Below are positions 15,936-48,699 of a stretch of 49,605 bases of DNA, in pieces. Within the stretch, counting starts at the first letter, position 1, and the number at the start of each line of letters is the position of its first letter. Source of the stretch: Octopus bimaculoides (taxonomy: Eukaryota); NCBI RefSeq assembly GCF_001194135.2, contig NC_068985.1:85708828-85758432 (forward strand). The letters are read 5' to 3'. The notes beneath the pieces are model-generated. The model did not search any database, was not told the origin of the DNA, and worked only from the letters and a program-made list of their open reading frames with translations. The position numbers and the translations under genes were made by a program.

Positions 15936-16070
15936 NNNNNNNNNNNNNNNNNNNNNNNNNNNNNNNNNNNNNNNNNNNNNNNNNNNNNNNNNNNNNNNNN
16001 NNNNNNNNNNNNNNNNNNNNNNNNNNNNNNNNNNNNNNNNNNNNNNNNNNNNNNNNNNNNNNNNNNNNNN
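15936..16070. other. Assembly gap (N). Other gaps: 20005-20014, 21842-22369, 34200-34209, 38686-38695, 41695-42315, 46221-46230, 47385-47492
   Basis: N runs, mostly abutting (TA)n or G runs. Confidence 1.
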
Positions 16071-21841: not shown

Positions 21842-22501
21842 NNNNNNNNNNNNNNNNNNNNNNNNNNNNNNNNNNNNNNNNNNNNNNNNNNNNNNNNNNN
21901 NNNNNNNNNNNNNNNNNNNNNNNNNNNNNNNNNNNNNNNNNNNNNNNNNNNNNNNNNNNNNNNNNNNNNNNNNNNNNNNNNNNNNNNNNNNNNNNNNNNN
22001 NNNNNNNNNNNNNNNNNNNNNNNNNNNNNNNNNNNNNNNNNNNNNNNNNNNNNNNNNNNNNNNNNNNNNNNNNNNNNNNNNNNNNNNNNNNNNNNNNNNN
22101 NNNNNNNNNNNNNNNNNNNNNNNNNNNNNNNNNNNNNNNNNNNNNNNNNNNNNNNNNNNNNNNNNNNNNNNNNNNNNNNNNNNNNNNNNNNNNNNNNNNN
22201 NNNNNNNNNNNNNNNNNNNNNNNNNNNNNNNNNNNNNNNNNNNNNNNNNNNNNNNNNNNNNNNNNNNNNNNNNNNNNNNNNNNNNNNNNNNNNNNNNNNN
22301 NNNNNNNNNNNNNNNNNNNNNNNNNNNNNNNNNNNNNNNNNNNNNNNNNNNNNNNNNNNNNNNNNNNNNCTGCTATTTTTCAGCGTGGTGGTATCTCTTA
22401 GATACCCTGTATTATAATTTTAAATAATTATTACCTTTGATGGTTTTTATTCCCATGCTGACCACTTAATAAGATCAATATTTTAAATATCGATCTTATC
22501 C

Positions 22502-27231: not shown

Positions 27232-27420
27232 TTGATCTGCTGGAAATAGGAATCAAATTCTTATGTTATGCAATATTGTCATTTAAAAAGGGAAAAAGAC
27301 ACAGGATAATGCAACTCTAGAGACATTATGTGTGGAGAAAATAAATGATTGGATGGTTATGGTTCGAATGTCTTCAAGAATGGGTCTCCTTAGTCATGTG
27401 TCTGATCCTCAATAAAAACA
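27232..27420 (-). mobile_element. Dispersed repeat family E, inverted
   Basis: cttgatctgctggaaatag..atcaaat is the reverse complement of the family E end motif; ggatggt.atgg...gaatg further in. Confidence 0.5.
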
Positions 27421-27560
27421 AAATTAAACCAATTTCAAAATTTGAGTGAAACGAAATTTATGGTAGAGAAGACTTTCTCAAGATGCTACAGAATGGCTTT
27501 AAATCTAGAATCCCATGATTAGAAAGGAAACTTCTTAACCACTTGGTCATAGAAGATCAC

Positions 27561-27786
27561 TTGAACCTTTTTGTTACCATATTTCTGTTGAAATTTCATT
27601 TCAATCAAAAATATCGAAGAATTTAGTAAAATAACTTTGTCATTATTAAGCTGGGATTTTGGAACCAATTAACCAGAAATTTTGATAGAAGGTTTTAATT
27701 TAAATCCCCTTAAAACAGGAAATCTGTATTACAGAACCAGGATGTTGATGAGGGCAGCTCAGGCAAGTTGGCATCAAAAGAGTTAA
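27561..27786. mobile_element. Decayed MITE with TTAA-like ends (possibly piggyBac-like)
   Basis: Left ttgaa-cctttttgttacc and right ggcatcaaaagag-ttaa; 13-bp TIR about 9/13. I recognise the internal sequence from memory as a common repeat. Confidence 0.45.
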
Positions 27787-28431
27787 TTTATTAATTTCTA
27801 AAATGGTACCATGGCAATGCTAATTAGGTAGAATGTGCAATTCTTTGTTGTAAGGTATTTTTTTTTTTATTGTATTTCCTCATTTGGTTTTATGACCTGG
27901 ACGTGCAGTTCCTCTTTATATCTTGCTGACATTAGTGTCCTGCCATGGGTGGCTGCCATGAGTAACTGACATAGATATTTGTCTTCTGACTCTTTTAATT
28001 AGTTGGTTCATAGCATTAAATCAGAATACTGTTTAACTTTAGTTTGTTTTAGTCGTCATGAGCAAGACCTTACTGGAGCACTGCTCACAGCCCTTACTGT
28101 ATGATTTTTTCCTATAAAACATTTACTGAAAGAGATTTTTGCCTTCAACAACTGAGCAGTGGATAGAATGAGTCTTCTTTTAATGTTTAACTGGTTTCTT
28201 ATGGGACTATGGCCATACTGGAGCACAACATCTAAGGGTTTAAGTTGATTCTATTAATACCAGTCTAGTGACTGTGACTGACTTCAATGACTTTGTAAGG
28301 GAGAAAGTCAAGGTTGACGTGGGTGTAAAGGAATGGAACCAAGGCAGAACCAAATACCACATGGTAAGTTTCGTTCAACTTGGTGATTCTGCCAACCCTC
28401 ATTACTATACCCATCATCATCTCTCTCTCTC

Positions 28432-28470
<39 letters not shown>

Positions 28471-28769
28471 TATATATATATATATATATATATATTTATT
28501 TGTGCATCAAGGTTACCATTGGTTTCATGTTAAGGAAAATATCTTAATATCTTAATAATTTTTCAAGCCGATCACCTGGTGGGATGGTGTTTGTCTCCCT
28601 TTTGGAAGAAAACAAAATGGAGATGAACACCATATCTCCAGCATTAATTCACAAAGAAATTTTATCTGCCAATGTGGTGTTGAGCACTCATTCTCATTGT
28701 CTGACAGTCATTTATCAACTTGTTGATCTAAAAGTTGAATAGTTTCTCATAATAAATTATATTTCTTGA

Positions 28770-29334
28770 TTAGCAGAGATACCCGGCGTTGCTCGGGATT
28801 AAAATGTCATACTTTGTATATATATATATTACAGTTATGTTGAAACAAATGATATATGAAAGTGAAGCATGATGACAAAACATTTGTGGAATAAATGATG
28901 AGCTAATTTGACTAAGTGACATGTCATGCATCCATTTGAAGGAATCCAGGCCCTAACCTGTCATGGAAAATTGAGGTGTGTGTGGGGGACTTTTGAATGC
29001 ACCAAAAAGCTGTCAGTGGATATATTCTCTTTTTTGGCAGTCAGTACTGAGTCTAACACGACCCATCATATGCTTGACAGTTGAATGAATGTAGGTGTAA
29101 TGGAAATATTTTATGTAAAGGGGTAGATTCTACAAATGGGCTGCAATGGGAGACGGCGATGGGGAAGTGAACTGTTGGAATGTTGCAAAAGGCATTGATA
29201 TTGAATTGCTGGTGTGGCTGTAGAACAAGAAACATAAACTGAGCCACACACACAATCACAGACACATTATTATACAAAATGTGATGACACTCACATACAT
29301 ATAGTAAGACAGACACACACTGAGGCATATATAG
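28770..29334 (+). mobile_element. Possible non-autonomous Helitron/Helentron-like element
   Basis: Starts ttagcagagata followed by a CpG-rich hairpin cccggcgttgctcggg. Ends gacagacacacac..atatatag. This layout resembles DINE/Lep1-type elements. Confidence 0.35.
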
Positions 29335-31331
29335 CTTTTCACCTCATTGTTTTTGCAGCCATCACATATGTATAAGTATGTGTAGATGTGTGTTTTAATT
29401 CAAATGACAGACAGACACACACACGTACATACACATACATATATATACACATAAATATATATGCTTATTCCCATATATATATATACACACATTATATATA
29501 TATATATATATATATGCACGTATGCACACATATATGGATACATGGCCTCCTCTTGATGAAGTTTCTACTAAAAGCATGCTAAACCAGTTTAAACCTGAAT
29601 ATAGAGGGTGGGGAGGGGGGAATTTAATGTCAGTTACACAACAATAAATTTGCAAAGTCAATGATTCATTCTTTTTCTCAGCTCAGGTGTAGACCTCTGT
29701 TTATTAGTTCTTATGTATTTGGAATAAACCCTGATAATGTAAAAATACCACAACCACTTGTGAAGAAGAGGGTCCTTCAATGTGTGTGTGTGTGTGTGTA
29801 GTTCTATTTGCAAAGATGGAAGATGAAAACTAATACTGTTAGACCTATGGTGATGATGCTGATGATGGTAATGGTGGTGATGATGGTGGTGGTGCTGGTG
29901 ATGGTGTTGTTGTTGTCCTTGTTGATGGTGATGGTGATGATAATAGAAATGAAATATTAACAAGGATTTTAAAATATTTATATGGAAAAGAATAAAAATT
30001 GTTTTGACTGGATGGATTAGCTGATTACACAAGTTGATAGACATGGTCTTGTAGTTCCAGGAAAATTAATCTCAGCAATTTAATCAAGACAATTGGCAGC
30101 ATAACTGAATGCCATTATAAGAGGAGACAGTGGAAGGAAATAAGAGCGATGAGGAATTTAATTGCAGCAGGATGTGTTACATAGAAATATAGCAATATAT
30201 GTGTGTGTGTGAAATATGAGCTGTGAACTTTGAGGGGTTGTGAAATGTGGTCATGAAATGCAATGATGAATGCTTTGAATGAACCCAAAGGGGACAGAAG
30301 ACCCTCAGGAGAGTGAAGGATTCTTCTAGCTGGGGATTAAAGTCAGTAAGTACATCAATAAAGGAACCATTGAGAGAGAAAGAGAAAGGGTAAAGTGTGT
30401 GTGTGCAAGTGTGTATAGGAAGAATGATGGTCATTACGTTTATTAAATCAATCATTCTACAGTGTAATGATTTGATTTACTAAGTTTTCCCCTGAATCAG
30501 TGAATGACACCACTTTCCTGAGAAACTATATCCACCACCACCACCACCACCACCACTATAGCCAGTACCAACTTCTGCTGCTAGTTAAGTACAAGATGAG
30601 TTAAGTTGAGCACCAATAAATATCTACCTAAGTTCCTTGATTTACCAAAATATTGCCATTTTTAGAAGCTGAGAAACCTGACGCTAACAGAAAGGTGAAA
30701 ATATTAAGTCATCTCATTCCATGCTGTCTTCTGGTTTGAAATCAAACTGGATTTAGGTTTTGCATTCCTCCATGGTCAAAAGGTGGTGAATTTGGAAGAG
30801 TCATTAGAGTATCAGAGGAAATACTTTGTAGTATTTATTCTGACATCATCACTGCCACAAAACAACAACCATCATCATCATTGTCATCAATTTTAATAAC
30901 TATTTTTCTGTGCTTGAATGAGTTGAACAGAATTTGTTGAGAGAGATTTTTCATAGCCAGATTCCCTGTCACCAACCCCCATCTGTTTCCAAGAAAGGTA
31001 GTATTTTCCCCTGTCCAAACATAGTGAAAGAGAGAGGGAAAGAAAAATTACGAAGAATGGTAGACGAGATCAATAAATTGATAAATGGAAGACTGACAGG
31101 TTGGGAGGAAGCAGGTTTTGAGACAGGCAGGTATATGAGCTGATGGGGAAAATATGGGGAGGGATGAAATAAAGTGGGAATGAAAAAGAAAGAGGATAGA
31201 TGAAAAGAAGAAAGATAGAGAGTTAGGGTTAGTGGTATAATGTGATGAAATAATGTTGAAGAATGAAAGAAAATTTTGAGAAATGAAAATTAGATAGGAG
31301 AGTTCAGATGAGAGAAGAAAAAGAGGCTAAG

Positions 31332-31370
<39 letters not shown>

Positions 31371-31376
31371 GATAGG

Positions 31377-31793
31377 TAGATAAATTAAGAAAAAGAGTCA
31401 AATGCAGTGTTATTCAAATCTTTATACTTCCAACATATGTTTCGAAGAAAACATTGATATTATTCCAGAGGGAATTTCTCCACTCTTAATTTTCCGTTAA
31501 TTTTTTTCTTTCTCCCCCTTCTCTTTCTCTAAATTGCCTTTGACGTTAAATCTGTTAACGGTTTTTAAAAAATAACTTGCCAGCATTCCCCTTCATCATA
31601 TATGTGGTAATCACATTCAGTTAAAATGGTTATTGATGTGTTTTGTTTCTCTTCTGTCCCTGATGAGATGATTGCATTGTTTTACATCATTTTATTCCCT
31701 CCAGAATAATATCAATGTTTTCTTCGAAAGATATGTCGGAAATATAAAGATTTGAACAACACCTGTGTTTGACTCCATTTCTTAATTTGTCTA
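31377..31793. mobile_element. Foldback MITE with about 100-bp terminal inverted repeats and TA ends
   Basis: 31377-31475 versus the reverse complement of 31694-31793: the inner 55 bp are 50/55 identical and the outer about 45 bp also align; 218-bp spacer. Confidence 0.88.
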
Positions 31794-32654
31794 TGTTATA
31801 CAAAAACATTTCACTTAACCCTGGAATTTCTACCTTTATAAGTAGGCTGTAATATTCTTGGCACTTATGTGATTTTTTGCTATCCTGGTAACTATTTATT
31901 TATTTTTTTCCATGTTATTTGTACACATTGTAAAAATACACATACATTTATATTTATATGTATGTATATATTAATATATGCATGTATGTTTGTTTGCATG
32001 TGAATGACAATAACAGAGTGAAAGGAGGAAAAAAATTAATAACTGAAAGTAGACAAAACAAGAAAATCACTCAAGGTTTGAAACACAAACAAGAATAACT
32101 AAAAAGGGGAGAAATAACCCCTATAATTTCCGATGGGTGGTCATTTAAAAATAGGCTATAAGAGAGCCTCTATTGGTCACTAAACCTGATAGAAATAACT
32201 GCTAAATGTTTTTCAAATTCCTAGTTTCAATTTAAAAAATAGCAAGAAACTGGATAATATAATCCTAGATATATCCAAAAATTAAACAGGATGGTCACAA
32301 CTGGAACACCATTGACCACAGCGCTGCCTAATTAGCAATGATCAGGGTCTAAATAAGAGCAAGCCTCAATTACTAACCTCGTAAAAAATCTTGTTTCCTC
32401 CATCTCTCCTAACATCTCTTGTCCTCTCTACAAACTGTTTATTATTTTCATCCAAGTCAATGATTCAGATGCATTTTTGCCTTGTTATCCTCATTGTTTC
32501 AACAATCAAATCTCTCTTTCAATATTTCACCCATTCCTGTCTTCCCCACCCCCTCTCCCAATGCCATTAATTTGGGATTCCATCCCTGTCTGCAGTTTTT
32601 ATTTCACTAAACATTGAACAGTAAATCTTTTATAGAAACTACTCAAAGGTTTGT

Positions 32655-32828
32655 TGTTTAAATGCAGCTCCAGCCTGACCCAGCTAATCTAAATCAAAGG
32701 CATTCCAGACATGACCATTCCATCATTTATCAGACAACTAATACTTTGTCCAGTGTCCAGTTCCTTTTGTTATAAACTGTTAGAGTAGATTTGAGGGAGA
32801 TTTCGATGGTATTTCTTGCAGGTTGAGC
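32655..32828 (+). mobile_element. Dispersed repeat family E
   Basis: tcaaaggcattccagacatgaccattcc ... gatttgagggagattt.gatggtatttcttgcaggttgagc. Confidence 0.6.
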
Positions 32829-33650
32829 CTGTAATTACTACAGGCAATTCTGTTATTTTCCAGATTAATTAATGGAAAAGACAGCATGAGAAATGGTAAT
32901 ACGAGTCTTCAGTGGAGAAGCTAACGTTTTATACTCTGTACATCCACCCACAAACATTCTTCAATCCATGATGGTTGTTTACCATGCAACAGCAAAACTT
33001 CAATTTCTGTGAAAGCTTTTACCAAAGATGAATGAATAAATAAATAAATAACCTGAAGAATATGTGCAAGTTTACATGAATCAACAAGGGCTCAAACTAT
33101 TAACATTATTATCTTCTTTATCATCATCATCATCACCATCATCACCATCACCATCATCACCAACATCACCATCATCCTCACTGCCTCATAGATGCTAATG
33201 GAGAGCTGAAAGGTTGGTTAGTAAATTATGAAGTGACAGGCTATATACTATATTACAATGTACAAAAAAAAAAAAAAGAAAAGAATTCTGTTTAGCTCAA
33301 GAATAACTAAGAATGAATGCGATGTAAAACCGAACAGAAGATAATAATAAAACAGAACCCTTCCATCAGAGCTATTTTAGAATACATGAATAAATCCACA
33401 ATAATTCTGAATTTATAGAAGATAAATTATTGTGTGGATACACAATTCTGTAAATAATAGTTACTGATGGTATATGTCAATTTTCTTTTTACACTTTTCC
33501 TCCATGGATTTAAGTGGCAGAGAGAATAACTTTGCTTCTGGATAGGAGGTAGGGTCAGTTACAAATGAAATGGATACTTTTACATGGGGCCAAAACACAT
33601 TCTCTCTATATTTAAGTGGTTGCCAATTATTCTATTCCAGCTCTCACTCA

Positions 33651-33684
<34 letters not shown>

Positions 33685-34060
33685 GGCTGGCTGTCTCTTC
33701 CCTTCACCTCTCTCTCTCACTCACTCACTTTGTGTGTGTGTGTGTAAGGTATCATCTGTCAGATATTCCATCAGGTAACATAAAACATTCTGCTGAAATG
33801 CTGAAACGCAGGTACTCTTGCGTCGATGGCACACAAATTCTATTGAATCTAACCTCATGAAGGGAAAGGATCAGGCAAATAAAAAGTAATTTTTTTTTCA
33901 TAGTCTATTATTTCCTTTCATTACTGATATACACACAGTGAGCAGGTATCAACCATCATCGAAGAAGCAGCTAATTTGATGGGATATGTTTTAGTGATGA
34001 CTACACATACATAAACATATACACGAAACATACGTGTAACAAATGCATATACACATATAT

Positions 34061-34161
34061 CAGGTATGGCTGTGATGGTTAAGAACCTTACTTCCGAACC
34101 TTGTGGTTTCAGGTTCAGTCTACAGCATGACACTTCACCAAGCATTTTCTGCCATAGCTCC

Positions 34162-34163
<2 letters not shown>
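34061..34163 (+). mobile_element. tRNA-like SINE head (family B related)
   Basis: tggctgtgatggttaagaa...ggtttcaggttcagtc; A/B-box-like motifs. Confidence 0.55.
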
Positions 34164-34199
<36 letters not shown>

Positions 34200-34209
34200 N
34201 NNNNNNNNN

Positions 34210-34245
<36 letters not shown>

Positions 34246-34248
<3 letters not shown>

Positions 34249-34705
34249 ACAAGTGACAGACCTTTTGGGATATGCGGTGCTTGAGAAGACCTAGCAAGCC
34301 AAGTGAAACAGTAATTCTGGCCTATGCCAGTGCAGCATAACTGGCCCATTTAAGAGTACCTTTCAATCATTGGGCAATAAATTGTGCTTGCGAAGACCTG
34401 TTGAATCAAGTGATGTCATTGTCGTGGCCGATATTGCCAGTGGCATGTAAAAAGCACCATTCAAGCATGGTCGATGCCAGTGCCAGCTGACTGGCTTCCA
34501 AGCTGGTGACATGTAAAAAGCACCCACTACACTCTTGGAGTGGTTGGCATTAGGAAGGGCATCCAGCTGTAGAAATCTTGCCAGATCAGACTGCAGCCTG
34601 GTGTTGCCTTCTGGCTTGCCAGCCCTCAGTCAAACCGTCCAACACTTGCTAGCATGAAAAGCAGACATTAAACGATGATGACGACGACGACGATGATGAT
34701 GATGA

Positions 34706-34708
<3 letters not shown>
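34246..34708 (+). mobile_element. Family C, longest copy, with RTE-type 3' tail and (GAC/GAT)n
   Basis: Internal duplications (gtgcttg.gaagacct ×2; catgtaaaaagcacc ×2), tail ggttggcattaggaagggcatccagctgtagaa..ttaaac(gat)n. Confidence 0.8.
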
Positions 34709-34755
<47 letters not shown>

Positions 34756-34772
34756 CTTCACACACATACATC

Positions 34773-35338
34773 ATGGTGTTTAGAGTGATCATTAGTGATG
34801 GTGTTGTCATGCCTCCACTCATCTTCCCACAGACTCAACACAGAAGCCTACATGAGATGCCTGGAGGAAGTAGTGCTGCCCTGGGTCAAGAGGGTGGCTG
34901 CTGGAAGATCCTATGTCTGGCAAAAGGACTCTGCACCAGGTCACACAAGCAGGAGAACTCAGACAATTTCTGCAACCACACCACCCCTAACATCTGGCTA
35001 TCTAACTCCCCAGACTGATACCCCCTTGATTATTATGTGTGGGGTACAGTTGAGCGAGAGACCAACAAAACTCCTTGTAACACCAAAGATGAACTGAAGA
35101 CAAGGATTATGGCAGTATTCACCAACGTAGACAAGGAGACCTCCAAAAGAGTTGCAGGAGATTCCAAAGTCGTCTGGAGGTCGTGGTTGAAGCCAATGGC
35201 AATTTTATTGAATAAATTTACTCTTTAGTATATCAAGATATTTTTATGTAATTTTGGTAAATATATCCGTTAAAATGAGATGTCAGTGTTATTTTCATTT
35301 TTGCATAATTTAGACAACAGTTTATTCACTGCACCCTG
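34773..35338 (+). mobile_element. Tc1/mariner transposase C-terminal fragment (probably DD37D/maT) with right TIR
   Basis: VFRVIISDGVVMPP..RLNTEAYMRCLEEVVLPW..YVWQKDSAPGHTS..TPNIWLSNSPD*YPLDYYVWGTVERETNK..DELKTRI across frameshifts. Ends ...tcactgcaccctg followed by TA (35339-35340). Confidence 0.9.
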
Positions 35339-35351
35339 TATATGTATATAC

Positions 35352-35450
35352 ATCATCATCACATCATCATTTAATGTCCCGTTGTCCATGCTGATATGGG
35401 TTGGATGGTTTGACCAGAGCTGGCAAGCTGGGACTTGTACCACACTCCAG
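35352..35450 (-). mobile_element. Family C tail fragment
   Basis: (cat)n-ttaatgtcc.gttgtccatgctga.atgggttggatggtttgac. Confidence 0.7.
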
Positions 35451-35530
35451 TGGAGATAAAAATATTGTTGTAAACTTTCTGAAAAAACTACTTTTATCTG
35501 TCAATATTTTGCAGGCATAGAAGGACAGGC

Positions 35531-35557
35531 ATAATAATAATAATAATAATAATAATG

Positions 35558-35637
<80 letters not shown>
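35531..35637. repeat. (AAT)n directly joined to (ATT)n: palindromic microsatellite
   Basis: Symmetry centre 35591/35592; 46-bp arms with one mismatch (G at 35557). Confidence 0.95.
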
Positions 35638-35817
35638 GATGATGATGTTATTATCTCACGTGCTAACAAATCCTAGTATTTGTTAAACAATCCACATATA
35701 TGTAACTTTGATATATTTATATTTTTCACTTAAATATATTTAAAAAATAAATTTTGCGCATAAAAATCTGCTTGACACATTTTTATGATTAGAAAAATTC
35801 CTGAGATATTTTATATT

Positions 35818-35947
35818 TACAGTGTTGTGAAGATTGGTGATATATACAGTGTTGTGACTAAAGCTTGATGATATAGTTCATACATACAGTGAAGTGGCTA
35901 AAGTTTAGTTAATATGTACAGTGTTGTGACTAAAGATTGGGTAAATA
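35818..35947. repeat. Irregular minisatellite, 4 units starting tacagtgttgtga(ctaa)ag
   Basis: tacagtg starts at 35818, 35846, 35885 and 35917, with variable tails. Confidence 0.75.
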
Positions 35948-36039
35948 TTTTTATTGAAACAAAAGGTGACATGGCTGGGTGGAAGTAAAAAATTGAGGCA
36001 TAGGTGACTGCCACGTCAAAACTATTTTAGGTGGTGCTT

Positions 36040-36220
36040 TGTTGATGTTGTTTAAATCTGACTGAGTGGACTTATGATTAAAGCTATCCTAACCATGACC
36101 ATCCCACCTTTTTTTTAAGACCTAAAGTTTCTATGACTACATTACTTAATGTCTTCTCTTTTTTAAGGACTGTAGAATGCAATTTGAAAGAGATTTGGCT
36201 GCTGTTTCTAGCAGATTGAT
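36040..36220 (+). mobile_element. Dispersed repeat family E
   Basis: atgattaaagctatcctaaccatgaccatccc ... atttgaaagagatttggctgctgtttctagcagattga. Confidence 0.6.
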
Positions 36221-36344
36221 TAAGTTGGTAAATCTCTTTCTATTTCTAATAACATAATTGAAGGAGAAAGACTAGAGATCATCATCCATTTTTCCTTTGG
36301 TCTTTGTAACCTTGACAACAAATTGTCAATAGATCTTGATGTTG

Positions 36345-36579
36345 AAGGCAGGGGGAGCTGGCAGAAATGTTAGCTTGAGGGGCGAAATGCTTAGCAGTAT
36401 TTTGTCTGCTTTTACGTTCTGAGTTCAAATTCCGCCAAGGTCGACTTTGCCTTTCATCCTTTCGGGGTCTATAAATTAAGTACCAGTTATACACTGGGGT
36501 CAATATAATCGACTTAATCCCTTTGTCTGTCCTTGTTTGTCCCCTCTATGTTTAGCCCCTTGTGGGCAATAAAGAAATA
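36345..36579 (+). mobile_element. Young SINE family A variant with a 14-bp TSD
   Basis: Retains CpGs (ttccgccaaggtcgactttgcctttcatcctttcgggg). agatcttgatgttg is duplicated exactly at 36331-36344 and 36580-36593. Confidence 0.92.
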
Positions 36580-38742
36580 AGATCTTGATGTTGTTCAAAA
36601 ATATGTTATGAGGTCTTTGTGAGCAAGCTACATCCTTTTAGACCAAGATGGACTTGGTCATTCAATAAATAGTGATTGGTGAAGTACTGGGGTTAATTTG
36701 ACCAACTAAAGTCCCCAAAATGGTGCCCCAGCAAGGCCCTAATACAAAAGAAAGCTTATATTATGAACTAAGATGTAGCTGGAAGTGTGTACTCTCTCTC
36801 TCTGAAGTGTGAAGACTGAAGAAATTTGTGAGAAACACCAGGAAACAATGAAAGCATCTTAGATTGATGTGGGTGGAGATAACACCAGCATATGGTGGTG
36901 CTCCAGCATGGCCACAGCCTTAGGGCTTAAACGTATAAAAGAATAAAAGAATATGAATCAGAGAAAACAAAGTTGAAGGTGGTCTTCACAAAATTTCAAA
37001 TTGAAAGATAGAATTAAATACTCTAAATACATCAAGTTCATCATTTTAGGTAAAAAAAAAGAGTTAAAAAAAAAGTTTACCCCCCCCCCCCCCTCTCATT
37101 AACACAAATCAATAAATTTACAAAGATAAACTTCATTAAACTAATCCCCAAAATAATATAGTTTAGAACTACATAAGCTTTTCCTATTGCATCGTTGACT
37201 TTAAACAAAACAGAGACAAACTATTTTTCTCCCGTTCCATGCATCACTGTGTGGTTAACAAACTCCCTTTGCAATCATAAAGTCCCATGTTCAACCCAAA
37301 CTGTCCCCACACTTGGGTTTGGCCAATGCATTGTAAGGGAAATTTGGTGAAGCTCATTGAATGTGTGTGTGTGTGTGCATGTGCATGTGTGTGTGTACAT
37401 ACATGTGCATGTGTGCGCGCCTCTGTAAATCAGTATCACTACCTTGTGATGTTTAACCTTTCCAATGAAAAGTAACTCTAAAAGTGATGAAAGTCAAGGT
37501 AGACTTAACCATTTGCTAAACAGAGATCAGTAAAATGGGTTCCAGATGAAGTATTGAAGTGAACACAACTAAAAGTTGTTAAAGATGTGGCCCCAGCATG
37601 GCTGCAGTCTCATGATGGTAATTAGTAACAGAAAAGAAGTAATCTATCTACCAAATAATGGCCTATTATCTTAATTATTCAATTCTGATTAGTCTAGGAT
37701 TGCTCGTTATTTCTTTCTTTTTAATGAGATCAGTCTAGATGACATGCTGTCTGACAGTTCTTTTGTCATCACAGACTGTTATGATGACAATCTCTTATAG
37801 AATCAAATGACACAAAGACATGAACAACTTAATTAAATCTCAAAACTTTGCTCTCAACAACTGGAGCAGATTTTCCTTTTTTTTTTTTTTCCAATTTTTC
37901 TTAGTCTCAGCCATATTAAATTCTCTCTGGTGAAATTGATCAATTCTCATTGCTAAGGCCACATCTGACCAAATAATAACCACAGTTGGCCTCTGATAAG
38001 TAAAAATGAACACCACTCAATAATTTAGTCTTACTTCATAAGCAATTCTCATGTGTAAATATAAATGTAAATTATAAATAATTTGGAGAAATAAAAATAA
38101 GTTATAAAGAAGGTTGGGGCTGTTTACTCTATTGCCAGTGTTCAAACCAAAATTTCTCCAGTTTTTCTCTCGAAACATTGTCTTTTAAAACATTCTCGCA
38201 TGTGGGCATCAGTGAGGTGAGGGCTTGTTAAGAACCTGCTCAGAACCAGTCATTCTCTGTTTTACATCTATCTCACCATGCTTGCATGAGTTAGGTGAAT
38301 GCATATAACTAAAGCATTGTCTTACAGCCAAATACCCTTCCTGTTGCTCATCCTTGTCTGTTGGGGATTTATCCCTCTATCGTCTCTGAAATAGGTGGGA
38401 CTAGCAGAGGCTTTGTTGAGTGGGATTATAAATGTGAAAAATATTTGATGTTAATGGAAAAGACAGTCAAGGATTTCCTTAACGGTTCCTTTCCTTCTGA
38501 TTTATAAAAAAATAACAAATAAACCAAATTTAAATTCAGGTTTATTAATACCTAAAATACAAACCATTCAACCATGAGATATTGACTCTGTTTAGTTGAT
38601 GTGTGGTACATAAATTCCATCTAGAATGATGATCCAAGACATTCAGAAGATGTATCAAGATCACCTTCATAAAAATGGTGGTGGTNNNNNNNNNNGGGGG
38701 GGGGGGGGGAATAAATAAAAAATAATAACAAACAAATCTTTT

Positions 38743-39088
38743 TTCTCTTTTACTTCTTTCAGTAATTGGACTGTGACCAAGCTGGGGCATGCTTTGAAGG
38801 GTTTCATCAAACTTAGAACTTATTTTTTAAAGACTGGTTATTATTCTAATGGTCTCTTTTGCCAAACTATTAAGTTATAGGGTCATAAACAAACCAACAC
38901 TAGCTGTCAAGTGGTAGGGGTGGGGGACAAATACAAGCACTCATACATGATGAACTTCTTTCAGTTTCCATCAATCACATTCACTCACAAGGCATTTATC
39001 AGCCTAGGGATAAAATGGAAGACACTTGTCACAGTAGGACTGAATCTAGAACCATGTGGTTGGGAAGTAAACTGTTTACCACACAGAT
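38743..39088 (-). mobile_element. SINE family B, near full length, diverged
   Basis: Colinear with 46038-46454. Confidence 0.8.
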
Positions 39089-39688
39089 ATGTATCTAAAA
39101 TGAAATTTTAATCTTATATTTGTATTCTTTTTAAGAAAATACCCATTTCCCCACCCACCAATATATGTATTTATTCAATTTTATTCATTTATTAATAAGT
39201 TGTTAATTATTATAAATTAATATTGGTTTACATAGTTATTCTAAATTACTTTTGTAATCAGTAAATATTGCCAAAGTCTTTGTAACAGTTGGTGTGTATA
39301 ATATTCTTAATTTTTCTGTGAGAAGCTAAAAAGAAGAGATATCAGAAAAAAGTTACATAAATTAAGATCTTCATTTTGGAAAGATATATCTTAATACATG
39401 TCATACTTCTGACAGTAACACCAACAAAGATATTAGTGCTAAGCTGCAATACCTTCAAAGTGGTGACGTTTTTTTAATTTGATATCATTGCTAGAATGGA
39501 GAAATAGAGCCTTACATGTATGAATAGCAGCCAGTCTTTTCCAAAAATACCTTGCTTAAGCCTTTGTCTGCAGGTTAATAGTTAAACCTGATTGACAGGG
39601 GACCTAAAAGCGCAATATTTCAACCAATTAGGAGCAAAACTGAGCAAAACAATTCACAACGTAGACATTTGTATTTACTTTATAAATT

Positions 39689-39888
39689 AGTTTCAAATTT
39701 TGACACAAGGCCAGCATTTTCTGGGGAGGGCATGAGTTGATTATATCGATCAAGGTGCTCAACTGGTACTTTTTTTTATTGTCCCTGGAAGGATGAAAGA
39801 CAAAGTCAACCTCAATGGAATTTGAACTCAGAACATAAATACAAATGCATTTTGCCAAGTGCAGTAACAACTCTGCTAGTTCACTGCT
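39689..39888 (-). mobile_element. SINE family A
   Basis: gtttcaaattttgacacaaggccagc..gctcaactggtac..ggaaggatgaaagacaaagtcaacctc..gaatttgaactcagaac. Confidence 0.85.
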
Positions 39889-40750
39889 TTGCATTCATCT
39901 TATATATTAAGATATGTGAAATATACAAAGAACTTTAATGAGATTGTAATATATAGATTATAACTTTCTCCATACAATTGACTTTTTGATGGGGGTCGGC
40001 TATGGTTCATCTCTTTTGATTTAGCATCTCATTTTTCTTTATGCTAGCTTTTGTCACTTTTATAAGAAATAGTTCCAGCTATCTTTGAGCATTAGCATGT
40101 CTGCTTCACTCGAAGAGATTTCCTTCCTTCTCAATGACATTTTCGTACAGCCTCACCACTTCTTCCATTTCGAAATTCCTCACACTTTTACATCACACAT
40201 ATTCATGAATCACAGCTGCACAACTTTATTTCTTCTGGTTTGCACCAAACCTCATTTCCTTCTTCACACCAGATTTCTTTATTTTATCTTTTTACATTTG
40301 GCTTTCTTCACCTTTCATACCTCCATTCTTGTTGCCAGATTTAGCTTTCTTTGACTCTTCATTCACAATCATATTGAAAACCATATTTTCGATTCCATGA
40401 AGATCGCTTCAAAAGTATCATCTCATTCCACTAAACATATCAATTATATTCAATGCAATACAGAAACGAGATTCAAATAATCCAACTAACAGAATTAGAT
40501 TTAATAATGCATTTAACTAGATTTTCTTTTCGCTCTAACCTCATATTAACAAATTATCACAGCTATTTCGTTATGCACTTTCATTCATCAATAAATTATG
40601 AAGATAAATTACTAATATATACTGTTATTAAATTATTCCACTCTCACATGTAAACTTTGTTCAATAAAATGCATATTTAAAGCTATATTTACCAATAGTT
40701 ATAATTTTTTGTCTGCAGTGTGGTTTCTCTTGCAGAAATACCAATGTCTG

Positions 40751-40780
40751 ACTTACCTGGAAAAAGAAAAAAAAAGAAAA
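40751..40780 (-). other. Back-to-back 3' and 5' splice sites (Y22-CAG|GTAAGT); junction 40757/40756
   Basis: Minus strand TTTTCTTTTTTTTTCTTTTTCCAG|GTAAGT. Confidence 0.6.
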
Positions 40781-41471
40781 TTATTTTAAATGAACAAGTG
40801 ATAATTGCTGTAATAATCAGAATCAAGTAACATCTACAAAAGGAAGAAGACAAAAGCAAGAAAAAAATAACAAAACAGTTTTTTAAAAAAAAAAAAACAT
40901 TAATTAACATTTCAATTTAATTCAGCTTCAAGTAGCAACGACTACAGAATTAGTTTGAAGAAGTAAAAAGAAAGAATAAGTAAATAAATAAAATGAGAAA
41001 AAAAACAAAAAAACAAAATGTAAAAAGTAATTTCAGATGAGAACCACTAAGAATAATTTATTTTAAATTTGTAACATTTGTTTAATTTTGAGCTAAGTAA
41101 AATTACAAATCATTACCAAACTAGTTAAAGAGGATGACGAGAGGAATAAGTAACCTTTAATAGAGAGAAAACATTTAATTGATGATGTCTGTGGGTGAGG
41201 AAGGAATCCGAACAATCGAGCAATCACTGTTGAGCACTATTAACCTTTCACACAAGATCTACTTATTCACTCTCGTTCATTTGGTTTTATAATTTAGACC
41301 CGGGGCAGCTCTGATTGGACATTTCAGTGAAACATATACAATTTCAAATATTACACATCACCATCCACGGCAAACGAAATGTGTACATTTTTCCAAAAAG
41401 ATCTTTTTTTCTCCATTAGGGGCCATCAAAAGCATAACTTTCCCAAATGATCTCACATTTTCTTTTATATT

Positions 41472-41694: not shown

Positions 41695-42649
41695 NNNNNN
41701 NNNNNNNNNNNNNNNNNNNNNNNNNNNNNNNNNNNNNNNNNNNNNNNNNNNNNNNNNNNNNNNNNNNNNNNNNNNNNNNNNNNNNNNNNNNNNNNNNNNN
41801 NNNNNNNNNNNNNNNNNNNNNNNNNNNNNNNNNNNNNNNNNNNNNNNNNNNNNNNNNNNNNNNNNNNNNNNNNNNNNNNNNNNNNNNNNNNNNNNNNNNN
41901 NNNNNNNNNNNNNNNNNNNNNNNNNNNNNNNNNNNNNNNNNNNNNNNNNNNNNNNNNNNNNNNNNNNNNNNNNNNNNNNNNNNNNNNNNNNNNNNNNNNN
42001 NNNNNNNNNNNNNNNNNNNNNNNNNNNNNNNNNNNNNNNNNNNNNNNNNNNNNNNNNNNNNNNNNNNNNNNNNNNNNNNNNNNNNNNNNNNNNNNNNNNN
42101 NNNNNNNNNNNNNNNNNNNNNNNNNNNNNNNNNNNNNNNNNNNNNNNNNNNNNNNNNNNNNNNNNNNNNNNNNNNNNNNNNNNNNNNNNNNNNNNNNNNN
42201 NNNNNNNNNNNNNNNNNNNNNNNNNNNNNNNNNNNNNNNNNNNNNNNNNNNNNNNNNNNNNNNNNNNNNNNNNNNNNNNNNNNNNNNNNNNNNNNNNNNN
42301 NNNNNNNNNNNNNNNTAGATGGGATGGAGATATCCTTCAAAGATGAATTCTAAAACAGTCGCTCAATCCTACCTGTAAATTCCATAAACAACGAAAAATT
42401 GAAAGTTAAATACAAACAACAAACGTTAATTATAAATTAGAAAATTATAAATTTTAATTATTAATTTTTCTCTATGTGATAGTGGATTTTCATCAATGAG
42501 TTCTTGAAAATTGGTTATTTTCCCTAAAACTATATACTATATATACTTTATCTGTAAGGCTCAATTTAATTTTAATTTTTTATAAATTGATTTTAATTGA
42601 GTTTTTTACCTGTAATTTTGGATTTTGTCCCTAATATTATTATATATAC

Positions 42650-43661: not shown

Positions 43662-43705
<44 letters not shown>

Positions 43706-43809
43706 CACACACACACACACACAAATGCATGCAAATGATGTTCCAAAAATATGCCAATATTTTAACACATCTCTTTATTGAAAATACCTTGCAGACTTTT
43801 GAGACTTAC

Positions 43810-43870
43810 GGTCGACACTATGAACCAAAATGAATGAATAAGTGCACAGTTATAGAACATTAAAATAGTG
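43810..43870 (-). CDS. Candidate 61-nt exon of an unidentified minus-strand gene; possible start MFYNCALIHSFWFIVST (signal-peptide-like)
   Basis: Acceptor gtatctttctccatacag, donor ACC|gtaagt, one open frame, ATG at 43860-43858. No homology recognised. Confidence 0.3.
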
Positions 43871-46037
43871 CTGTATGGAGAAAGATACACATATCCCATG
43901 ACATTGACAACAGACTTCTTGGATTCTCGATATTGCCATTAGCATCATTGAAAAGTTTCTCACAGAGATAAGAATCAAATCATTTCTTATATGATTACCA
44001 TTTGAAGTTAGAAGAAACCGTGTGTTATTTTGCATCTTATTCACATTGATTCTCTTCTCTCGTTTTGTTTTGTTGTTTGCGTTGACGTTTATTTAACTGT
44101 AACAATTTTGTGATGGATGATTTATGTTATGTCTAAGAAATGGAAAATGCGATTAACTTTCATTATTTGTTGCTTTTTGAACAAAAAAGAAATTGTATAT
44201 ATAATAATGATATTAAATTTTCATTTATCTGCTACATTAGAAATTATTCATTTACTGGCATTTATCAATAACTGTTAGCAAATTATCACAAACGTGTGAC
44301 ACCTTCCGTCTTACGATAAGCTGATAAAATTTAATGAAAGGCAAAAAAAAAAAAAGAATAAAAACTACAAAAAAAAAAATTAAAATTAAAGAAGTAAAAA
44401 TAGAAACCGAAAATGAAACATGATAAAAATGAAGATTTCATATTTTTATTGATAACTTATGAAAAATAAAAATAAGATGAAAAACACAAAATCATATCTA
44501 AAAATGATTTGTAAAAGAATTTTACTTGAGTGAATAAAAATGATTGATATTCGCTATATTGTGATTGATTGAATATGAATAAAGTAAAATCATAAGAATC
44601 ATCAGCAAGAATTAAAAATAATTACAAGAAAAATAAGCATTGCAAAACCTGTGTTTGGCTGTTTTCTTGAAGCATGGAATGGAAATTGTGGGTGTTTTAT
44701 ATCGAAAGTAGAGAAAGTTTGTTTTGTTTGTTTTTTGCTCTTGAATTAAGTCTTATTTGATGAAAGAATTGATTGGTTTGTTACAATTTATTGACCAAAA
44801 GGTAGTTTGTGCTTGAAGAAAAAATTGTTATGAAAAACAAGACAGAAATCAAAATAAATACAGCCAAATTGGAATGGAAATAGATTTTGAAGAAAAATTA
44901 TTCAAAATTGTAATAAAACGAAGCTTAACATCCGTAAAAGTGTTCTTATGCATGAAAAATTTGATAAATTGTATCAATAGATCTCAGGATTACAACATGG
45001 TGAGCAAAACAGAAATCTTGTTGAATACCTATACAAACAAGTTGAGAATCAAGAAAAAGAAACCAAAAAAATATTTGCTGTAACCTGGAGCCAAGCTTAA
45101 TGAGAAAATTCTTGCAGAAGTAATGGAAATATTCAATTATTTTATTGTAAACATTTTCTGTGGCATCACATTAAGGAGATGATAAGTTGTTGAAGTATAG
45201 AGTCCACGATAGCTTGAATTCCTTGTTCTTGTTAGTTTTACTTCAAATAGTTTCATATACGTCTTAAAAAAATACAACTGTTGTTTTCTCTTCTTCCAGA
45301 AGTCAACAGTCTGAGATGTTTCTAAGAAAGCAGAACAAAGAAACCGGTTATACAGCACAGGTTTCATTGCTCTGTTGTCAATCTGTTGCTGGATAAAATT
45401 CTTTGCATGACATTGATTGCTTCTCTAACCTGGATGAAGGCTTACCCTGCCCATTACAAGTTGGGGCAAAATGCTTCTGTAGTCAGAGGAGCAGTCCTGA
45501 CCAAACAGCATTTACTTATTACACTAACATGACATAAATAAAATATTTGTTGACAGAAACAGTCTTTGCTATTATAATTTATGGCAATTCTGAACTCCAT
45601 TAACTCTTTCAATACCAATTTGTTTGAGACTGTGTCTTGTTTGATAATATCAAGTCATTTAGTCCAAGAACAACTCTATTAAGTTGTGTTCAGCCATTTA
45701 ATTAGGACAAAATTAACGTGTACCAAAACTAGGGCAGGTAAAGCATATGATGATGATGATGATGATGGTTATATATGAATCAGTATTTATGCTTAGACTG
45801 GTCAGAATATTTTTGATGTCTTCAATATTTATTGAAACAATGTATTTTCTTTGAATATGGTCATGATAGGGTTAAATACCTGAGTCCTGATCCAGGTATT
45901 TTCTTACTGCAGAATAAGACAATTAACCAATCCTCTGTTCTGTTAACGACATAATTGAACTTTTGTAATGTTGAGTCCTTTCATATTTCTACCATAAAAA
46001 ATAAATTCCTTTAATGTTTGTAAATCTTGTGTCATTA

Positions 46038-46454
46038 TACTCTTTTACTCTTTTACACATTTCAGTCATTTGACTGTGGCCATGTTGGAGCACTGCTTTT
46101 ACTCAAACAAATCGACCCTAGGACTTATTTGTTGTAAGCCTAGTACTTATTCTATTGGTCTTTTTTGCCAGACTGCTTAGTTTCGTGGACATAAACACAC
46201 CAACATAAGTTGTCAAGCGANNNNNNNNNNGGGGGGGGGACAAACACAGACACAAAGACACACACAAATAAAGATATAAATATATATATTTACATGATGG
46301 GCTTCTTTTCAGTTTCCATCTACCAGATCTACTCACAAGGCTTTGGTCAGTGTGAGGATACAGTAGAAGACACTTGTCCAAGGTGCAGTGCAGTGGGACT
46401 GAACCTGGGACCATGTGGTCGGGAAGCAAGCTTCTTATCACACAACCACGCCTG
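46038..46454 (-). mobile_element. SINE family B, full length (contains a 10-N gap)
   Basis: Tail tactcttttactctttta, cagtcatttgactgtggccatg, gggcttcttttcagtttcc, head gggactgaacc..accatgtgg..cacacaaccacgcc. Confidence 0.88.
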
Positions 46455-46455
46455 T

Positions 46456-46650
46456 GATTGGCATTAGGAATTAAATCCAGCTACAAGAACCATGCTATAA
46501 GAACAAATGACACATACAAGCACGTAATCTTTGGTACCAGTCACTCCTGATGGGAGGTAACTCAGACTGTAACAGTCTGTCCAACCCATGACAGCATGGA
46601 AAATGGGCATAAATATACAGGTGATGACAGTGGTGATGATGATGATGATG
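46456..46650 (+). mobile_element. Family C tail fragment
   Basis: gattggcattaggaa...atccagct ... gtccaacccatgacagcatggaaaatggg..(gat)n. Confidence 0.65.
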
Positions 46651-46831
46651 AAGAAACATTACACTTCACTTGTTAACCTAGCAGTCAATAGAATGCTGGA
46701 AGAGTGAAGCTATCCGTACAGTAAGCTAATTATACAAAAAGTCTGCTTCAGCAGTAAATATAATGATTTAAATTTAAAACCTAACTAAAGTATTCTTATA
46801 CATTTGAAACAGATCAAAAGAACAATGCACA

Positions 46832-47384: not shown

Positions 47385-47547
47385 NNNNNNNNNNNNNNNN
47401 NNNNNNNNNNNNNNNNNNNNNNNNNNNNNNNNNNNNNNNNNNNNNNNNNNNNNNNNNNNNNNNNNNNNNNNNNNNNNNNNNNNNNNNNNNNNAAAACTGA
47501 GGCATATATATATATAATGTAAAAAACTGTTATAGAATTTGTTAGGG

Positions 47548-47645: not shown

Positions 47646-48302
47646 AATTCCTCCCAACTCACTCTTTCTCAACCTCTCTCTCTCTCTCTCTCTCTCTCTC
47701 CCAACAACCAACAAATTGGAAGAATTATTGCCATCTCTCTTTTCTCCAAGAGCAAATACTTTTACACAATTCAAAGGAATAATAAAAAAGTGAAAGTGAT
47801 TGCTTTGAAAGGATGGGATTGCTGAGAGACTCTGGCAGAACAGAGTACAAGATGGAATATACATACATATATACATACATACATACATACATACATACAT
47901 ACATACATACAAACATACATACATATATACATACGAATATGCATATATGCGTGAGCGTGTGTTTGTGTATGTAACAGTTTATGTTCAAATCAGTGTCTTT
48001 GTTATGTCCCCTTATGATATGTAACTTAGAAATTGGTCAAGCAGTGATTAATGAAATAAGTATTAGACTGAAATCAGTAATGGTGTTGATCTGATTGAAA
48101 GAAGTGCTCCAGTATGGTCACAGTTGTTGAATAACTGAAACTGGTAAAAGAATAAAAGAATTTGAAAGGATGTTTGGTAGCATGCGTGTATGCATCCGTA
48201 CTTATATGAATGTGTATCTGTGCTTAGATGCACATTCACACATCTGTGCTTACACACACACACACACACACACATCCACTGCTCCTTCCTACTTCTCCCC
48301 AA

Positions 48303-48486
48303 CCACACAACAGATTTCCTGTTCACCACACAACAGATTTCCTGTTCACCACACAACCGACTTCCTGTTCACCACACAACATATTTCCTGTTCACCACAC
48401 AATTGATTTCCTGTTCACTACACAACAGATTTCCTGTTCACCACTCAACCAGTTTCCTGTTCACCACTCAACCAATTTCCTGTTCA
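48303..48486. repeat. 23-bp minisatellite, 8 copies, consensus ccacacaacagatttcctgttca
   Basis: Eight contiguous 23-mers counted by hand; variation is concentrated at unit positions 9-13, and the last 9 bases ttcctgttca are invariant. Confidence 0.97.
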
Positions 48487-48699
48487 CCGTGTGGTATTTT
48501 CCAAGTAATTGTTGGTGCTGAAACACCAACATCAGACTGTTGTCATACCACGTGACCTTTTTCCACCAGTCACAGGCTAGCGTCCAGTAGTAAACATCGA
48601 CTCTCTTCACTCAAACTCTCATTCAGACCCCAATGGCCAAAGACTAGCCATATGCTTGAAACTCAGAGTACCAAGGAGTTTGAATCAAACTGATTTAAT

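What the first reader, a model, noticed from the sequence alone, without database searches (positions are those of the whole stretch)
40751..40860. Recursive-splicing (ratchet point) signature on the minus strand
Seen: 22 uninterrupted pyrimidines, CAG, then immediately the perfect donor GTAAGT. A second strong acceptor (cttgcttttgtcttcttccttttgtag) lies 77 nt upstream at 40834. Established: AG|GT zero-length exons subdivide very long introns in Drosophila and vertebrates; I know of no characterised case in cephalopods, whose introns are long. Inference: either a recursive site, or a 77-nt exon (40833-40757) whose end doubles as an acceptor, allowing include-or-ratchet choice. Either implies a minus-strand host gene with the downstream 40 kb largely intronic.
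Basis: partly seen in the sequence, partly recalled or inferred. Interest (0 to 1): 0.72.

Follow-up and report, generated by a model that had tools for sequence, protein, structure and literature searches.

The report
Used splice acceptor of a last exon
The pyrimidine-tract/AG/GTAAGT motif is real and its AG is a working splice acceptor in two octopus species, but the RNA keeps the GTAAGT and the ~0.7-3 kb behind it as an ordinary, conserved final exon, so recursive splicing is not shown.

Summary
It is unique in the window, and none of 100 shuffles produced it.

Assembled RNA contigs from five runs join one and the same upstream exon to this AG. That exon ends ...GGGAAATTCTTTAAAG and is not in the window. 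Three runs are the window's species and two carry Octopus vulgaris alleles. So this is a real, conserved 3' splice site closing an intron of more than 8.8 kb here and more than 20 kb in O. vulgaris.

After the junction the RNA stays colinear with the genome. GTAAGT is kept, and contigs end without a further splice at 40076-40167. Some runs of the window's species extend to about 37.9 kb. The stretch 40084-40758 shows 3.0% substitutions against O. vulgaris, versus 7.3% background (P about 8e-7). It therefore behaves as an exon, not as intron behind a ratchet point. A public O. vulgaris gene model also starts an exon at this AG|GT.

The 77-nt exon (40833-40757) appears in no contig and diverges at the background rate.

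Recursive use of GTAAGT in a minority of transcripts cannot be excluded, because only contigs were available, not raw reads. Verdict: an ordinary last-exon acceptor, of low interest.

The parts
40759..40780 (-). 22-nt polypyrimidine tract of the used 3' splice site (4 T longer in O. vulgaris)
40757..40758 (-). AG of the used 3' splice site. RNA contigs leave the genome exactly here and continue into an upstream exon ending ...TTCTTTAAAG.
   Evidence: the O. vulgaris gene model P0001 has an intron ending at the same AG
40751..40756 (-). GTAAGT, the first six bases of the exon, retained in all RNA contigs. After splicing it lies in AAG|GTAAGT, a consensus 5' splice site sequence.
40084..40756 (-). 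Core of the last exon. It is colinear in contigs of X1, X13, X14 (window's species) and X5, X8 (O. vulgaris alleles). Contigs end at 40076-40167 without loose letters. 97.0% substitution identity to O. vulgaris with a single 1-nt indel.
37877..40083 (-). Extension seen only in runs of the window's species (X1, X13, X16), interrupted by a high-copy SINE-like repeat at about 39690-39860. It is a long 3' end or read-through. It is absent from the O. vulgaris RNA run X5.
40687..40692 (-). GTAAAT, a weaker donor 64 nt into the exon. It is used in the O. vulgaris gene model (286-nt intron to the AG at 40408-40407). It is not spliced in any contig seen here.
40757..40833 (-). It is not present in any RNA contig. 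It has 6/77 substitutions plus a 4-nt indel against O. vulgaris, which is the background rate, so it is intron.
40834..40860 (-). Second acceptor-like tract (..ttccttttgtag). It is conserved in O. vulgaris, but there is no evidence of use.

Best explanation
The tract and AG at 40780-40757 form the 3' splice site of the last exon of a minus-strand transcript. That transcript is poorly annotated and probably non-coding or UTR-like. Its preceding exon (...CAGAATCTTACAGTATGGGAAATTCTTTAAAG) lies beyond the window, so the intron is more than 8.8 kb here and more than 20 kb in O. vulgaris. The spliceosome joins that exon to G40756. The exon then runs on colinearly, GTAAGT included, to a 3' end near 40080, with longer forms reaching about 37.9 kb in the window's species. 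GTAAGT is simply the start of this exon. In the bulk of the RNA it is not used as a donor. What is shown: the junction, its identity in two species, colinearity after it, the clustered contig ends, and the elevated conservation of the exon. What is inferred: the strand (from the canonical Y-tract/AG and the O. vulgaris annotation, because contigs have no direction), polyadenylation near 40080 (no poly(A) reads were seen), and the non-use of GTAAGT in rare molecules.
For:: contigs of X1 (978 nt, depth 6.5), X13 (972 nt, depth 87) and X14 (637 nt, depth 83) match 39809/39810/40145..40758. They then continue with the same non-genomic letters TTAAAGAATTTCCCATACTGTAAGATTC on the + strand. X5 (1267 nt, depth 67.5) and X8 (1036 nt, depth 23.4) match 40084/40129..40758 and then run on 592 and 406 letters, beginning with the same 30 letters. 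Their other ends stop at 40084 and 40129 with no loose letters. X2 and X4 hold only 40076-40279 and 40167-40331. X5 and X8 carry the O. vulgaris allele at 18 of 18 variant sites, so the junction is shared by two species; the upstream exon is absent from the window and from 20.3 kb of O. vulgaris sequence upstream of the AG. X5 holds essentially nothing else between 37420 and 43000, so the exon is discrete. X1 and X13 hold nothing upstream of 40758; the exon has 20/675 substitutions against 7.3% background (P = 8e-7) and one 1-nt indel; the public O. vulgaris model P0001 starts an exon at the same AG|GT and translates GTAAGT as part of its CDS.
Against: Only assembled contigs were available for the expressing runs. 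Contigs drop rare isoforms and have no strand, and their depth is a poor measure of expression. No poly(A)-containing read fixes the 3' end, and there is no canonical AATAAA just upstream of 40080; the nearest signals are TATAAA at 40064-40059 and CATAAA at about 40043. The runs X13-X16 of study P7 also hold 21-44% of the sampled words of 27400-37370. So transcription may continue more than 13 kb past the exon, as it would behind a ratchet point. In X1 the contig stops exactly 30 letters (k-1) into the upstream exon, which hints that this exon also has another partner. The regenerated AAG|GTAAGT is a perfect donor, and a weaker donor lies 64 nt downstream, the architecture of RS-exons.
Confidence: 0.72

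Rival explanations
1. True zero-length recursive site. The host gene continues far downstream. After the long upstream intron is removed, AAG|GTAAGT is used as a donor to remove the rest. The contigs seen are the recursive intermediate or a by-product.
For: The junction of an upstream exon to GTAAGT followed by colinear sequence is what an intermediate looks like. There is a sharp asymmetry of cover, nothing upstream of 40758 and cover downstream. P7 runs hold 21-44% of the words of 27400-37370. The regenerated donor is perfect, and the motif is identical in O. vulgaris.
Against: In O. vulgaris RNA (X5, X8) the stretch is a discrete 630-675-nt block at depth 23-67 in one contig with 400-590 nt of upstream exons. 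Nothing lies further downstream. Five runs end at 40076-40167. X1 holds only baseline words beyond 37.4 kb. The sequence behind the motif is more conserved than the flanks, whereas ratchet points have a conserved motif and poorly conserved surroundings (PMC8605326). Conservation of the motif alone is not significant (P = 0.10). No downstream exon or gene is known.
Confidence: 0.1
2. Expressed RS-exon with a local choice. After the upstream splice, the spliceosome can use GTAAGT (40756), use GTAAAT (40692), or use neither. Either donor would pair with the weak acceptor at 40407, as in the O. vulgaris model. This would give short alternative forms of the last exon.
For: The O. vulgaris model P0001 splices 40692 to 40406, leaving a 64-nt exon that begins with GTAAGT. 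Both sites are conserved. A strong ratchet donor with a weaker donor less than 100 nt downstream is the described RS-exon layout (PMC6224609, PMC8605326).
Against: All five contigs, including those from O. vulgaris RNA itself, are unspliced across 40692-40406. The acceptor at 40407 has almost no pyrimidine tract. The model's ORF has no Pfam match and its exon 2 carries -1/+1 indels in the window, so the intron may have been drawn to keep an ORF open.
Confidence: 0.1
3. Not splicing at all. The break at 40758 would be a genomic rearrangement, or a second genomic copy of the 0.7-kb block next to different DNA.
For: Contigs cannot tell RNA from DNA. The runs X13-X16 are of unknown kind. Another shared loose end, at 37706, is clearly non-canonical and probably a repeat boundary.
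Against: The break falls exactly after a 22-nt Y tract and AG. The same junction is seen in two species. DNA-like contigs of X17 and the O. vulgaris assembly are colinear across it. DNA depth over the block is single-copy. The expressing runs lack the upstream side altogether. An independent annotation places an intron end at the same AG.
Confidence: 0.03
4. The 77-nt exon 40833-40757 is the real exon, and the AG at 40757 is only its end.
For: A good acceptor at 40834 is conserved in O. vulgaris, and one reading frame is open across the 77 nt.
Against: No contig covers 40805-40831. All junctions land at 40757|40756. The 77 nt diverge at the background rate and carry a 4-nt indel.
Confidence: 0.02

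Closest known systems
Intronic ratchet points / zero-nucleotide recursive splice sites of Drosophila (Hatton 1998; Burnette 2005; Duff 2015, bioRxiv 10.1101/006163; Joseph & Lai, PMC8605326)
   Same: Juxtaposed acceptor and donor (Y)n-CAG|GTAAGT. It sits at the end of a long intron segment (more than 20 kb). A weaker donor lies 64 nt downstream. The motif is identical in a second species.
   Different: The product is visible and abundant in RNA. The sequence behind the motif is conserved over about 675 nt rather than only at the motif. There is no known downstream exon, no saw-tooth evidence and no lariat evidence.
Annotated (expressed) RS-exons of vertebrates, kept in mRNA because the exon junction complex represses the regenerated 5' splice site (Blazquez et al. 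2018, PMC6224609; Sibley et al. 2015)
   Same: An exon present in RNA whose junction with the preceding exon regenerates a strong 5' splice site (AAG|GTAAGT). By that paper's sequence definition it is a 'putative RS-exon'.
   Different: That class is defined on internal exons, which have a downstream exon to re-splice to. Here the exon is terminal in all contigs. Repression by the EJC, or skipping on its loss, is untested, and nothing is known for molluscs.
Ordinary terminal exons with alternative 3' ends (long-3'UTR or lncRNA last exons)
   Same: A single used acceptor. Colinear RNA of about 0.7 kb with longer 2.9-kb forms. No long conserved ORF. Moderate purifying selection.
   Different: Nothing essential. 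The only oddity is that the exon begins with a perfect donor hexamer, expected by chance in roughly 3 of 10,000 exons.

Membership tests
Intronic ratchet point (zero-length recursive splice site) | Tandem 3' splice acceptor | 5' splice donor, (Y)n NCAG|GTRAGT | tested here: met
Intronic ratchet point (zero-length recursive splice site) | Upstream exon is spliced to the AG, giving an intermediate that carries exon|GTAAGT | tested here: met
   five runs from two species. An ordinary exon gives the same junction.
Intronic ratchet point (zero-length recursive splice site) | The regenerated donor is then used. The product is invisible in mRNA and the upstream exon ends up joined to a downstream exon. 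| tested here: not met
   GTAAGT and 630-950 nt behind it are retained at contig depth 23-87. Contigs end without a splice. No downstream partner was found. Rare use cannot be excluded with contigs.
Intronic ratchet point (zero-length recursive splice site) | Lies inside a long intron, with a further exon of the same gene downstream | tested here: inconclusive
   The upstream intron is more than 20 kb. No gene or exon is called within 10 kb downstream in O. vulgaris. P7 runs do show downstream transcription.
Intronic ratchet point (zero-length recursive splice site) | Motif far more conserved than the sequence behind it | tested here: not met
   The whole 675-nt block is 97.0% identical. Motif identity alone has P = 0.10.
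Intronic ratchet point (zero-length recursive splice site) | Saw-tooth read density and lariats ending at the site in total or nascent RNA | not testable with these tools
   The raw RNA runs X18-X20 have no reads here at 6% sampling. The expressing runs are held only as contigs.
Expressed RS-exon (Blazquez 2018 definition) | [quoted passage not shown] | tested here: met
   AAG|GTAAGT in contigs. AGG|GTAAGT in the O. vulgaris model.
Expressed RS-exon (Blazquez 2018 definition) | Internal exon with its own downstream donor and a following exon | tested here: inconclusive
   It is terminal in all contigs. It is internal (64 nt, donor GTAAAT) only in the O. vulgaris gene model.
Expressed RS-exon (Blazquez 2018 definition) | Skipped through the regenerated donor when repression (EJC) is lifted | not testable with these tools
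   Needs knock-down or a minigene experiment.
Ordinary terminal exon | Used acceptor, colinear RNA, no downstream splice, 3' ends clustered | tested here: met
   ends at 40076, 40084, 40129, 40145 and 40167.
Ordinary terminal exon | Mapped poly(A) site with signal | tested here: inconclusive
   No poly(A) reads are available. Only variant signals are present, TATAAA at 40064-40059 and CATAAA at about 40043.

The most novel reading that the evidence does not exclude
The perfect donor regenerated at the very start of a conserved last exon (AAG|GTAAGT) may be functional. U1 bound there could re-splice to a far downstream acceptor and so skip this last exon. That would fit the transcription that P7 runs show for more than 13 kb downstream, and the hint that the upstream exon has a second partner. 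Alternatively, bound U1 could suppress the proximal poly(A) site and produce the 2.9-kb and longer forms. Either way it would be the first recursive-type 'include or ratchet' switch described in a mollusc, and an unusual one, because it would gate a terminal exon.
Probability: 0.1. Interest if true: 0.6.

Novelty: already known. Interest (0 to 1): 0.2.

Why it matters
Confirmed recursive splicing would be a first for cephalopods, whose introns are long; I found no paper that links recursive splicing with octopus. What the data actually show is an ordinary splice acceptor of a conserved last exon. The useful results are practical. They correct and extend the gene structure at this locus: a minus-strand transcript with an intron of more than 20 kb, only partly captured by a 'hypothetical protein' model in O. 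vulgaris. They also give a caution. A junction read of 'upstream exon | GTAAGT + colinear sequence' does not by itself distinguish a ratchet point from an exon that starts with GTAAGT.

Tried and rejected
Four of the eight read-laying runs gave nothing usable.
The named places were 37378-37417 and 44348-44399; for the cause was probably the (TG)n/(TA)n microsatellites. As a result the upstream block 43700-46825 and most of the downstream region could not be examined.
- the raw RNA runs X18-X20 (about 6% sampled) gave only partial hits on A/T-rich low-complexity runs and no true cover.

The apparent absence of X12 over 39908-40740 looked like a deletion allele. It is a tool artefact, because X12 holds 96% of the words there.

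Searching the window and the O. vulgaris locus for the upstream exon found nothing, so the host gene could not be named.

A protein search with both open frames across the junction found only the O. vulgaris hypothetical protein P0001. No annotated protein carries the observed upstream-exon/GTAAGT junction.

My first conservation estimate (97% against 76-87%) counted gaps as mismatches and exaggerated the contrast. The substitution-only figures are 97.0% against 91-94%, which is still significant.

I considered that the pyrimidine tract might be the antisense A-rich tail of a retroposon. The block is single-copy in DNA depth and I found no support for the idea.

The shared loose end at 37706 in X1, X13 and X16 was checked as a possible downstream splice. 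It has no GT/AG on either strand and its partner is not in the window or in L001, so it is probably a repeat boundary.

Rfam found nothing in the window. Pfam found nothing in P0001, in the conserved + strand ORF, or in two ORFs that I took by eye for Penelope-like and mariner-like remnants.

I ran no further search on the side observation at 44817-45080.

Full report
**Observation.** On the minus strand the window reads ...aaaataa ttttctttttttttctttttcc ag gtaagt cagac.... That is 22 uninterrupted pyrimidines at 40780-40759, AG at 40758-40757 and GTAAGT at 40756-40751. A second acceptor-like tract ends with AG at 40835-40834, which makes the candidate exon 40833-40757 exactly 77 nt. The site is the only pyrimidine tract + AGGTAAGT in the window on either strand. 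The exact pattern arose in 0 of 100 shuffles, and a relaxed pattern is expected 0.10 times per window. Sequence alone cannot decide function, however. In a genome of this size the motif must also occur by chance, and about 3 in 10,000 exons would start with GTAAGT at this base composition.

**RNA evidence: the AG is a used acceptor.**
- The raw RNA runs offered (X18-X20, about 6% sampled) have no genuine reads at 40400-41200, only partial hits on A/T runs.
- Assembled contigs of other runs are informative. In three runs of the window's species, one contig matches the genome up to 40758 and then continues with the same foreign letters. On the + strand these are TTAAAGAATTTCCCATACTGTAAGATTC. The runs are X1 (978 nt), X13 (972 nt) and X14 (637 nt).
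- Read on the minus strand this is ...GAATCTTACAGTATGGGAAATTCTTTAA-AG|GTAAGTCAGAC... An upstream exon ending in AAAG is joined to G40756; the two shared letters AG make the canonical cut the only one with an AG acceptor.
- Two further runs, X5 and X8, show the same junction with the same 30 upstream letters. There the contigs continue 592 and 406 letters into upstream sequence.
- X5 and X8 carry the O. vulgaris allele at all 18 sites where their contigs differ from the window. The junction and its partner exon are therefore shared by two species.
- The two species differ by about 7% in substitutions at this locus.
- The partner exon is not in the window. It is also not in 20.3 kb of O. vulgaris sequence upstream of the AG, a stretch that covers the window's N gaps.
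- The strand is inferred from the canonical tract/AG and from the O. vulgaris annotation, because contigs carry no direction.

**What lies behind the AG.**
- All five contigs stay colinear with the genome through GTAAGT.
- In the O. vulgaris RNA runs the block is discrete. X5 covers 40084-40758 at depth 67.5 and X8 covers 40129-40758 at depth 23.4. Each contig ends there without loose letters.
- X5 has nothing else between 37420 and 43000 apart from repeat fragments.
- In the window's species, X14 ends at 40145. X2 holds only 40076-40279 and X4 only 40167-40331.
- X1 and X13 run on to the SINE-like repeat at about 39810. X1, X13 and X16 cover 37750-39690. X1 then stops, holding only baseline words (0.05) of 27400-37370.
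- None of these runs has cover upstream of 40758.
- This is the picture of a last exon with a proximal 3' end near 40080 and longer forms of about 2.9 kb.

**Conservation.**
- The O. vulgaris locus L001 is colinear with the window's minus strand from 49605 down to 34768.
- The motif is identical there, with the T-run 4 nt longer. At the local divergence, 30 identical bases have P = 0.10, so this alone means little.
- The informative result is that the whole block 40084-40758 has 20 substitutions in 675 and a single 1-nt indel. The rate outside it is 7.3% (binomial P = 8e-7).
- The sequence behind the AG|GT therefore evolves like an exon. For intronic ratchet points the literature describes the reverse: an ultraconserved motif with poorly conserved exonic content, and products invisible in mRNA (PMC8605326).
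- The 77-nt candidate exon has 6/77 substitutions and a 4-nt indel, which is background, and it is in no contig.

**Public annotation.**
- A protein search with the two open frames across the junction found one hit, P0001. This is a 102-aa 'hypothetical predicted protein' of O. vulgaris with no Pfam domain.
- Its gene model has an intron ending at the same AG and translates G|GT AAG TCA... as GKSDIG... It therefore also treats GTAAGT as exon.
- The model uses different upstream exons. One is equivalent to window 45496-45446, and there the window carries -1/+1 indels, so the ORF is not conserved.
- The model also removes a 286-nt intron from GTAAAT at 40692 to the weak acceptor at 40407. None of the contigs shows this intron, not even those from O. 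vulgaris RNA.
- No other gene is called within 10 kb on either side in that annotation.

**Interpretation.** GTAAGT is the exon's first six bases and is not used as a donor in the bulk of the RNA.

But a junction of 'upstream exon | GTAAGT + colinear sequence' is produced equally by an ordinary exon, so those criteria do not discriminate.

**What keeps a recursive reading alive (about 0.1 each for a true ratchet and for a local RS-exon choice).**
- The regenerated AAG|GTAAGT is a perfect donor.
- A weaker donor lies 64 nt downstream, the RS-exon layout of PMC6224609 and PMC8605326.
- X1's contig stops exactly k-1 = 30 letters into the upstream exon, hinting at a second splice partner. This is a weak inference from assembly behaviour.
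- The P7 runs X13-X16 hold 21-44% of the words of 27400-37370, an unexplained downstream transcription that X1 and X5 lack.
- By the sequence definition of Blazquez et al., the exon is a 'putative RS-exon'. That class, however, consists of internal exons, and its defining behaviour (skipping via the regenerated donor) is untested here.

**Limits.**
- Only contigs, not reads, were available for the expressing runs.
The conserved upstream block and most of the downstream 37 kb could therefore not be examined.
- No poly(A) read fixes the 3' end.
- The upstream exon's gene is unidentified.

**Verdict.** It is an ordinary splice acceptor of a last exon, and a public gene model already places an intron end at this AG. 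Interest is low. There is a small residual chance of a recursive-type switch, which raw total-RNA reads or long reads would settle.

Noticed in passing
window 43813-45219: A 1.4-kb block with 97.7% substitution identity to O. vulgaris (32/1396; P about 5e-17 against the 7.3% background). It is the most conserved stretch of the alignable 15 kb, it is AT-rich and it has no long ORF. Places 44348-44399 inside it tripped the read laying filter, so no RNA could be laid on it.
   Followed up: partly
window 44817-45080 (+ strand): An 88-codon stop-to-stop ORF inside that block. All 4 substitutions against O. vulgaris fall on codon position 3. There is a 1-nt indel in its A-run near the end. It has no Pfam match. 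It could be a + strand coding exon or chance.
   Followed up: partly
It is not the donor joined to 40756 in any contig.
   Followed up: yes
window 27400-37370: Runs X13-X16 (one study, kind unknown, but they contain the spliced junction) hold 21-44% of the sampled words here, while X1 holds 5%. The source and strand of this downstream transcription are unknown.
   Followed up: no
window 37706: X1, X13 and X16 all have a contig that matches from 37706 upward and carries the same 30 foreign letters before it (TGCCTTAAAGTTCATTAGCGATATCTGGTA). There is no GT/AG on either strand, and the partner is not in the window or in L001. It is probably a repeat or insertion boundary.
   Followed up: partly
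window 39690-39860; also 38788-39091 and 37572-37950: Very high-copy repeats. Contig word depth reaches about 1e6 at 39776-39863, which looks like a SINE with a tRNA-like core. These repeats break all contigs of the transcript.
   Followed up: no
window 45446-45496 (minus strand): This is the equivalent of exon 2 of the O. vulgaris model P0001, with AG and GTAAG splice sites intact. It has a -1 and a +1 indel relative to O. vulgaris, so the predicted ORF is locally frameshifted. This argues that P0001 is not a real coding sequence.
   Followed up: partly
runs X5/X8 versus X17 (all labelled organism C): X5 and X8 match the O. vulgaris assembly at 18/18 variant sites in the exon. The DNA-like run X17, under the same species label, shares only 4 of its 15 variants. 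The label seems to cover two distinct lineages.
   Followed up: partly
window 13042-13617 (minus) and 34789-35094 (+): ORFs that look by eye like transposon remnants. The first has a GIY-YIG-like 'VYSIPCSCGRFYKGKT' motif as in Penelope-like elements. The second has a mariner/Tc1-like 'WQKDSAPGH' motif. Pfam gave no significant match to either.
   Followed up: partly
window 41695-42315, 21842-22369, 15936-16070, 47385-47492 and five 10-N runs: Assembly gaps totalling 1432 N. The O. vulgaris sequence spanning the 621-N gap next to the finding does not contain the missing upstream exon.
   Followed up: yes
window about 40010 (L001 about 21050): O. vulgaris has a 36-nt (ATC)n-containing insertion just past the conserved exon block.
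   Followed up: no
window 48302-48488: A minisatellite of about 8 copies of a 23-nt unit (ACCACACAACAGATTTCCTGTTC), with many di- and tetranucleotide microsatellites nearby.
   Followed up: no
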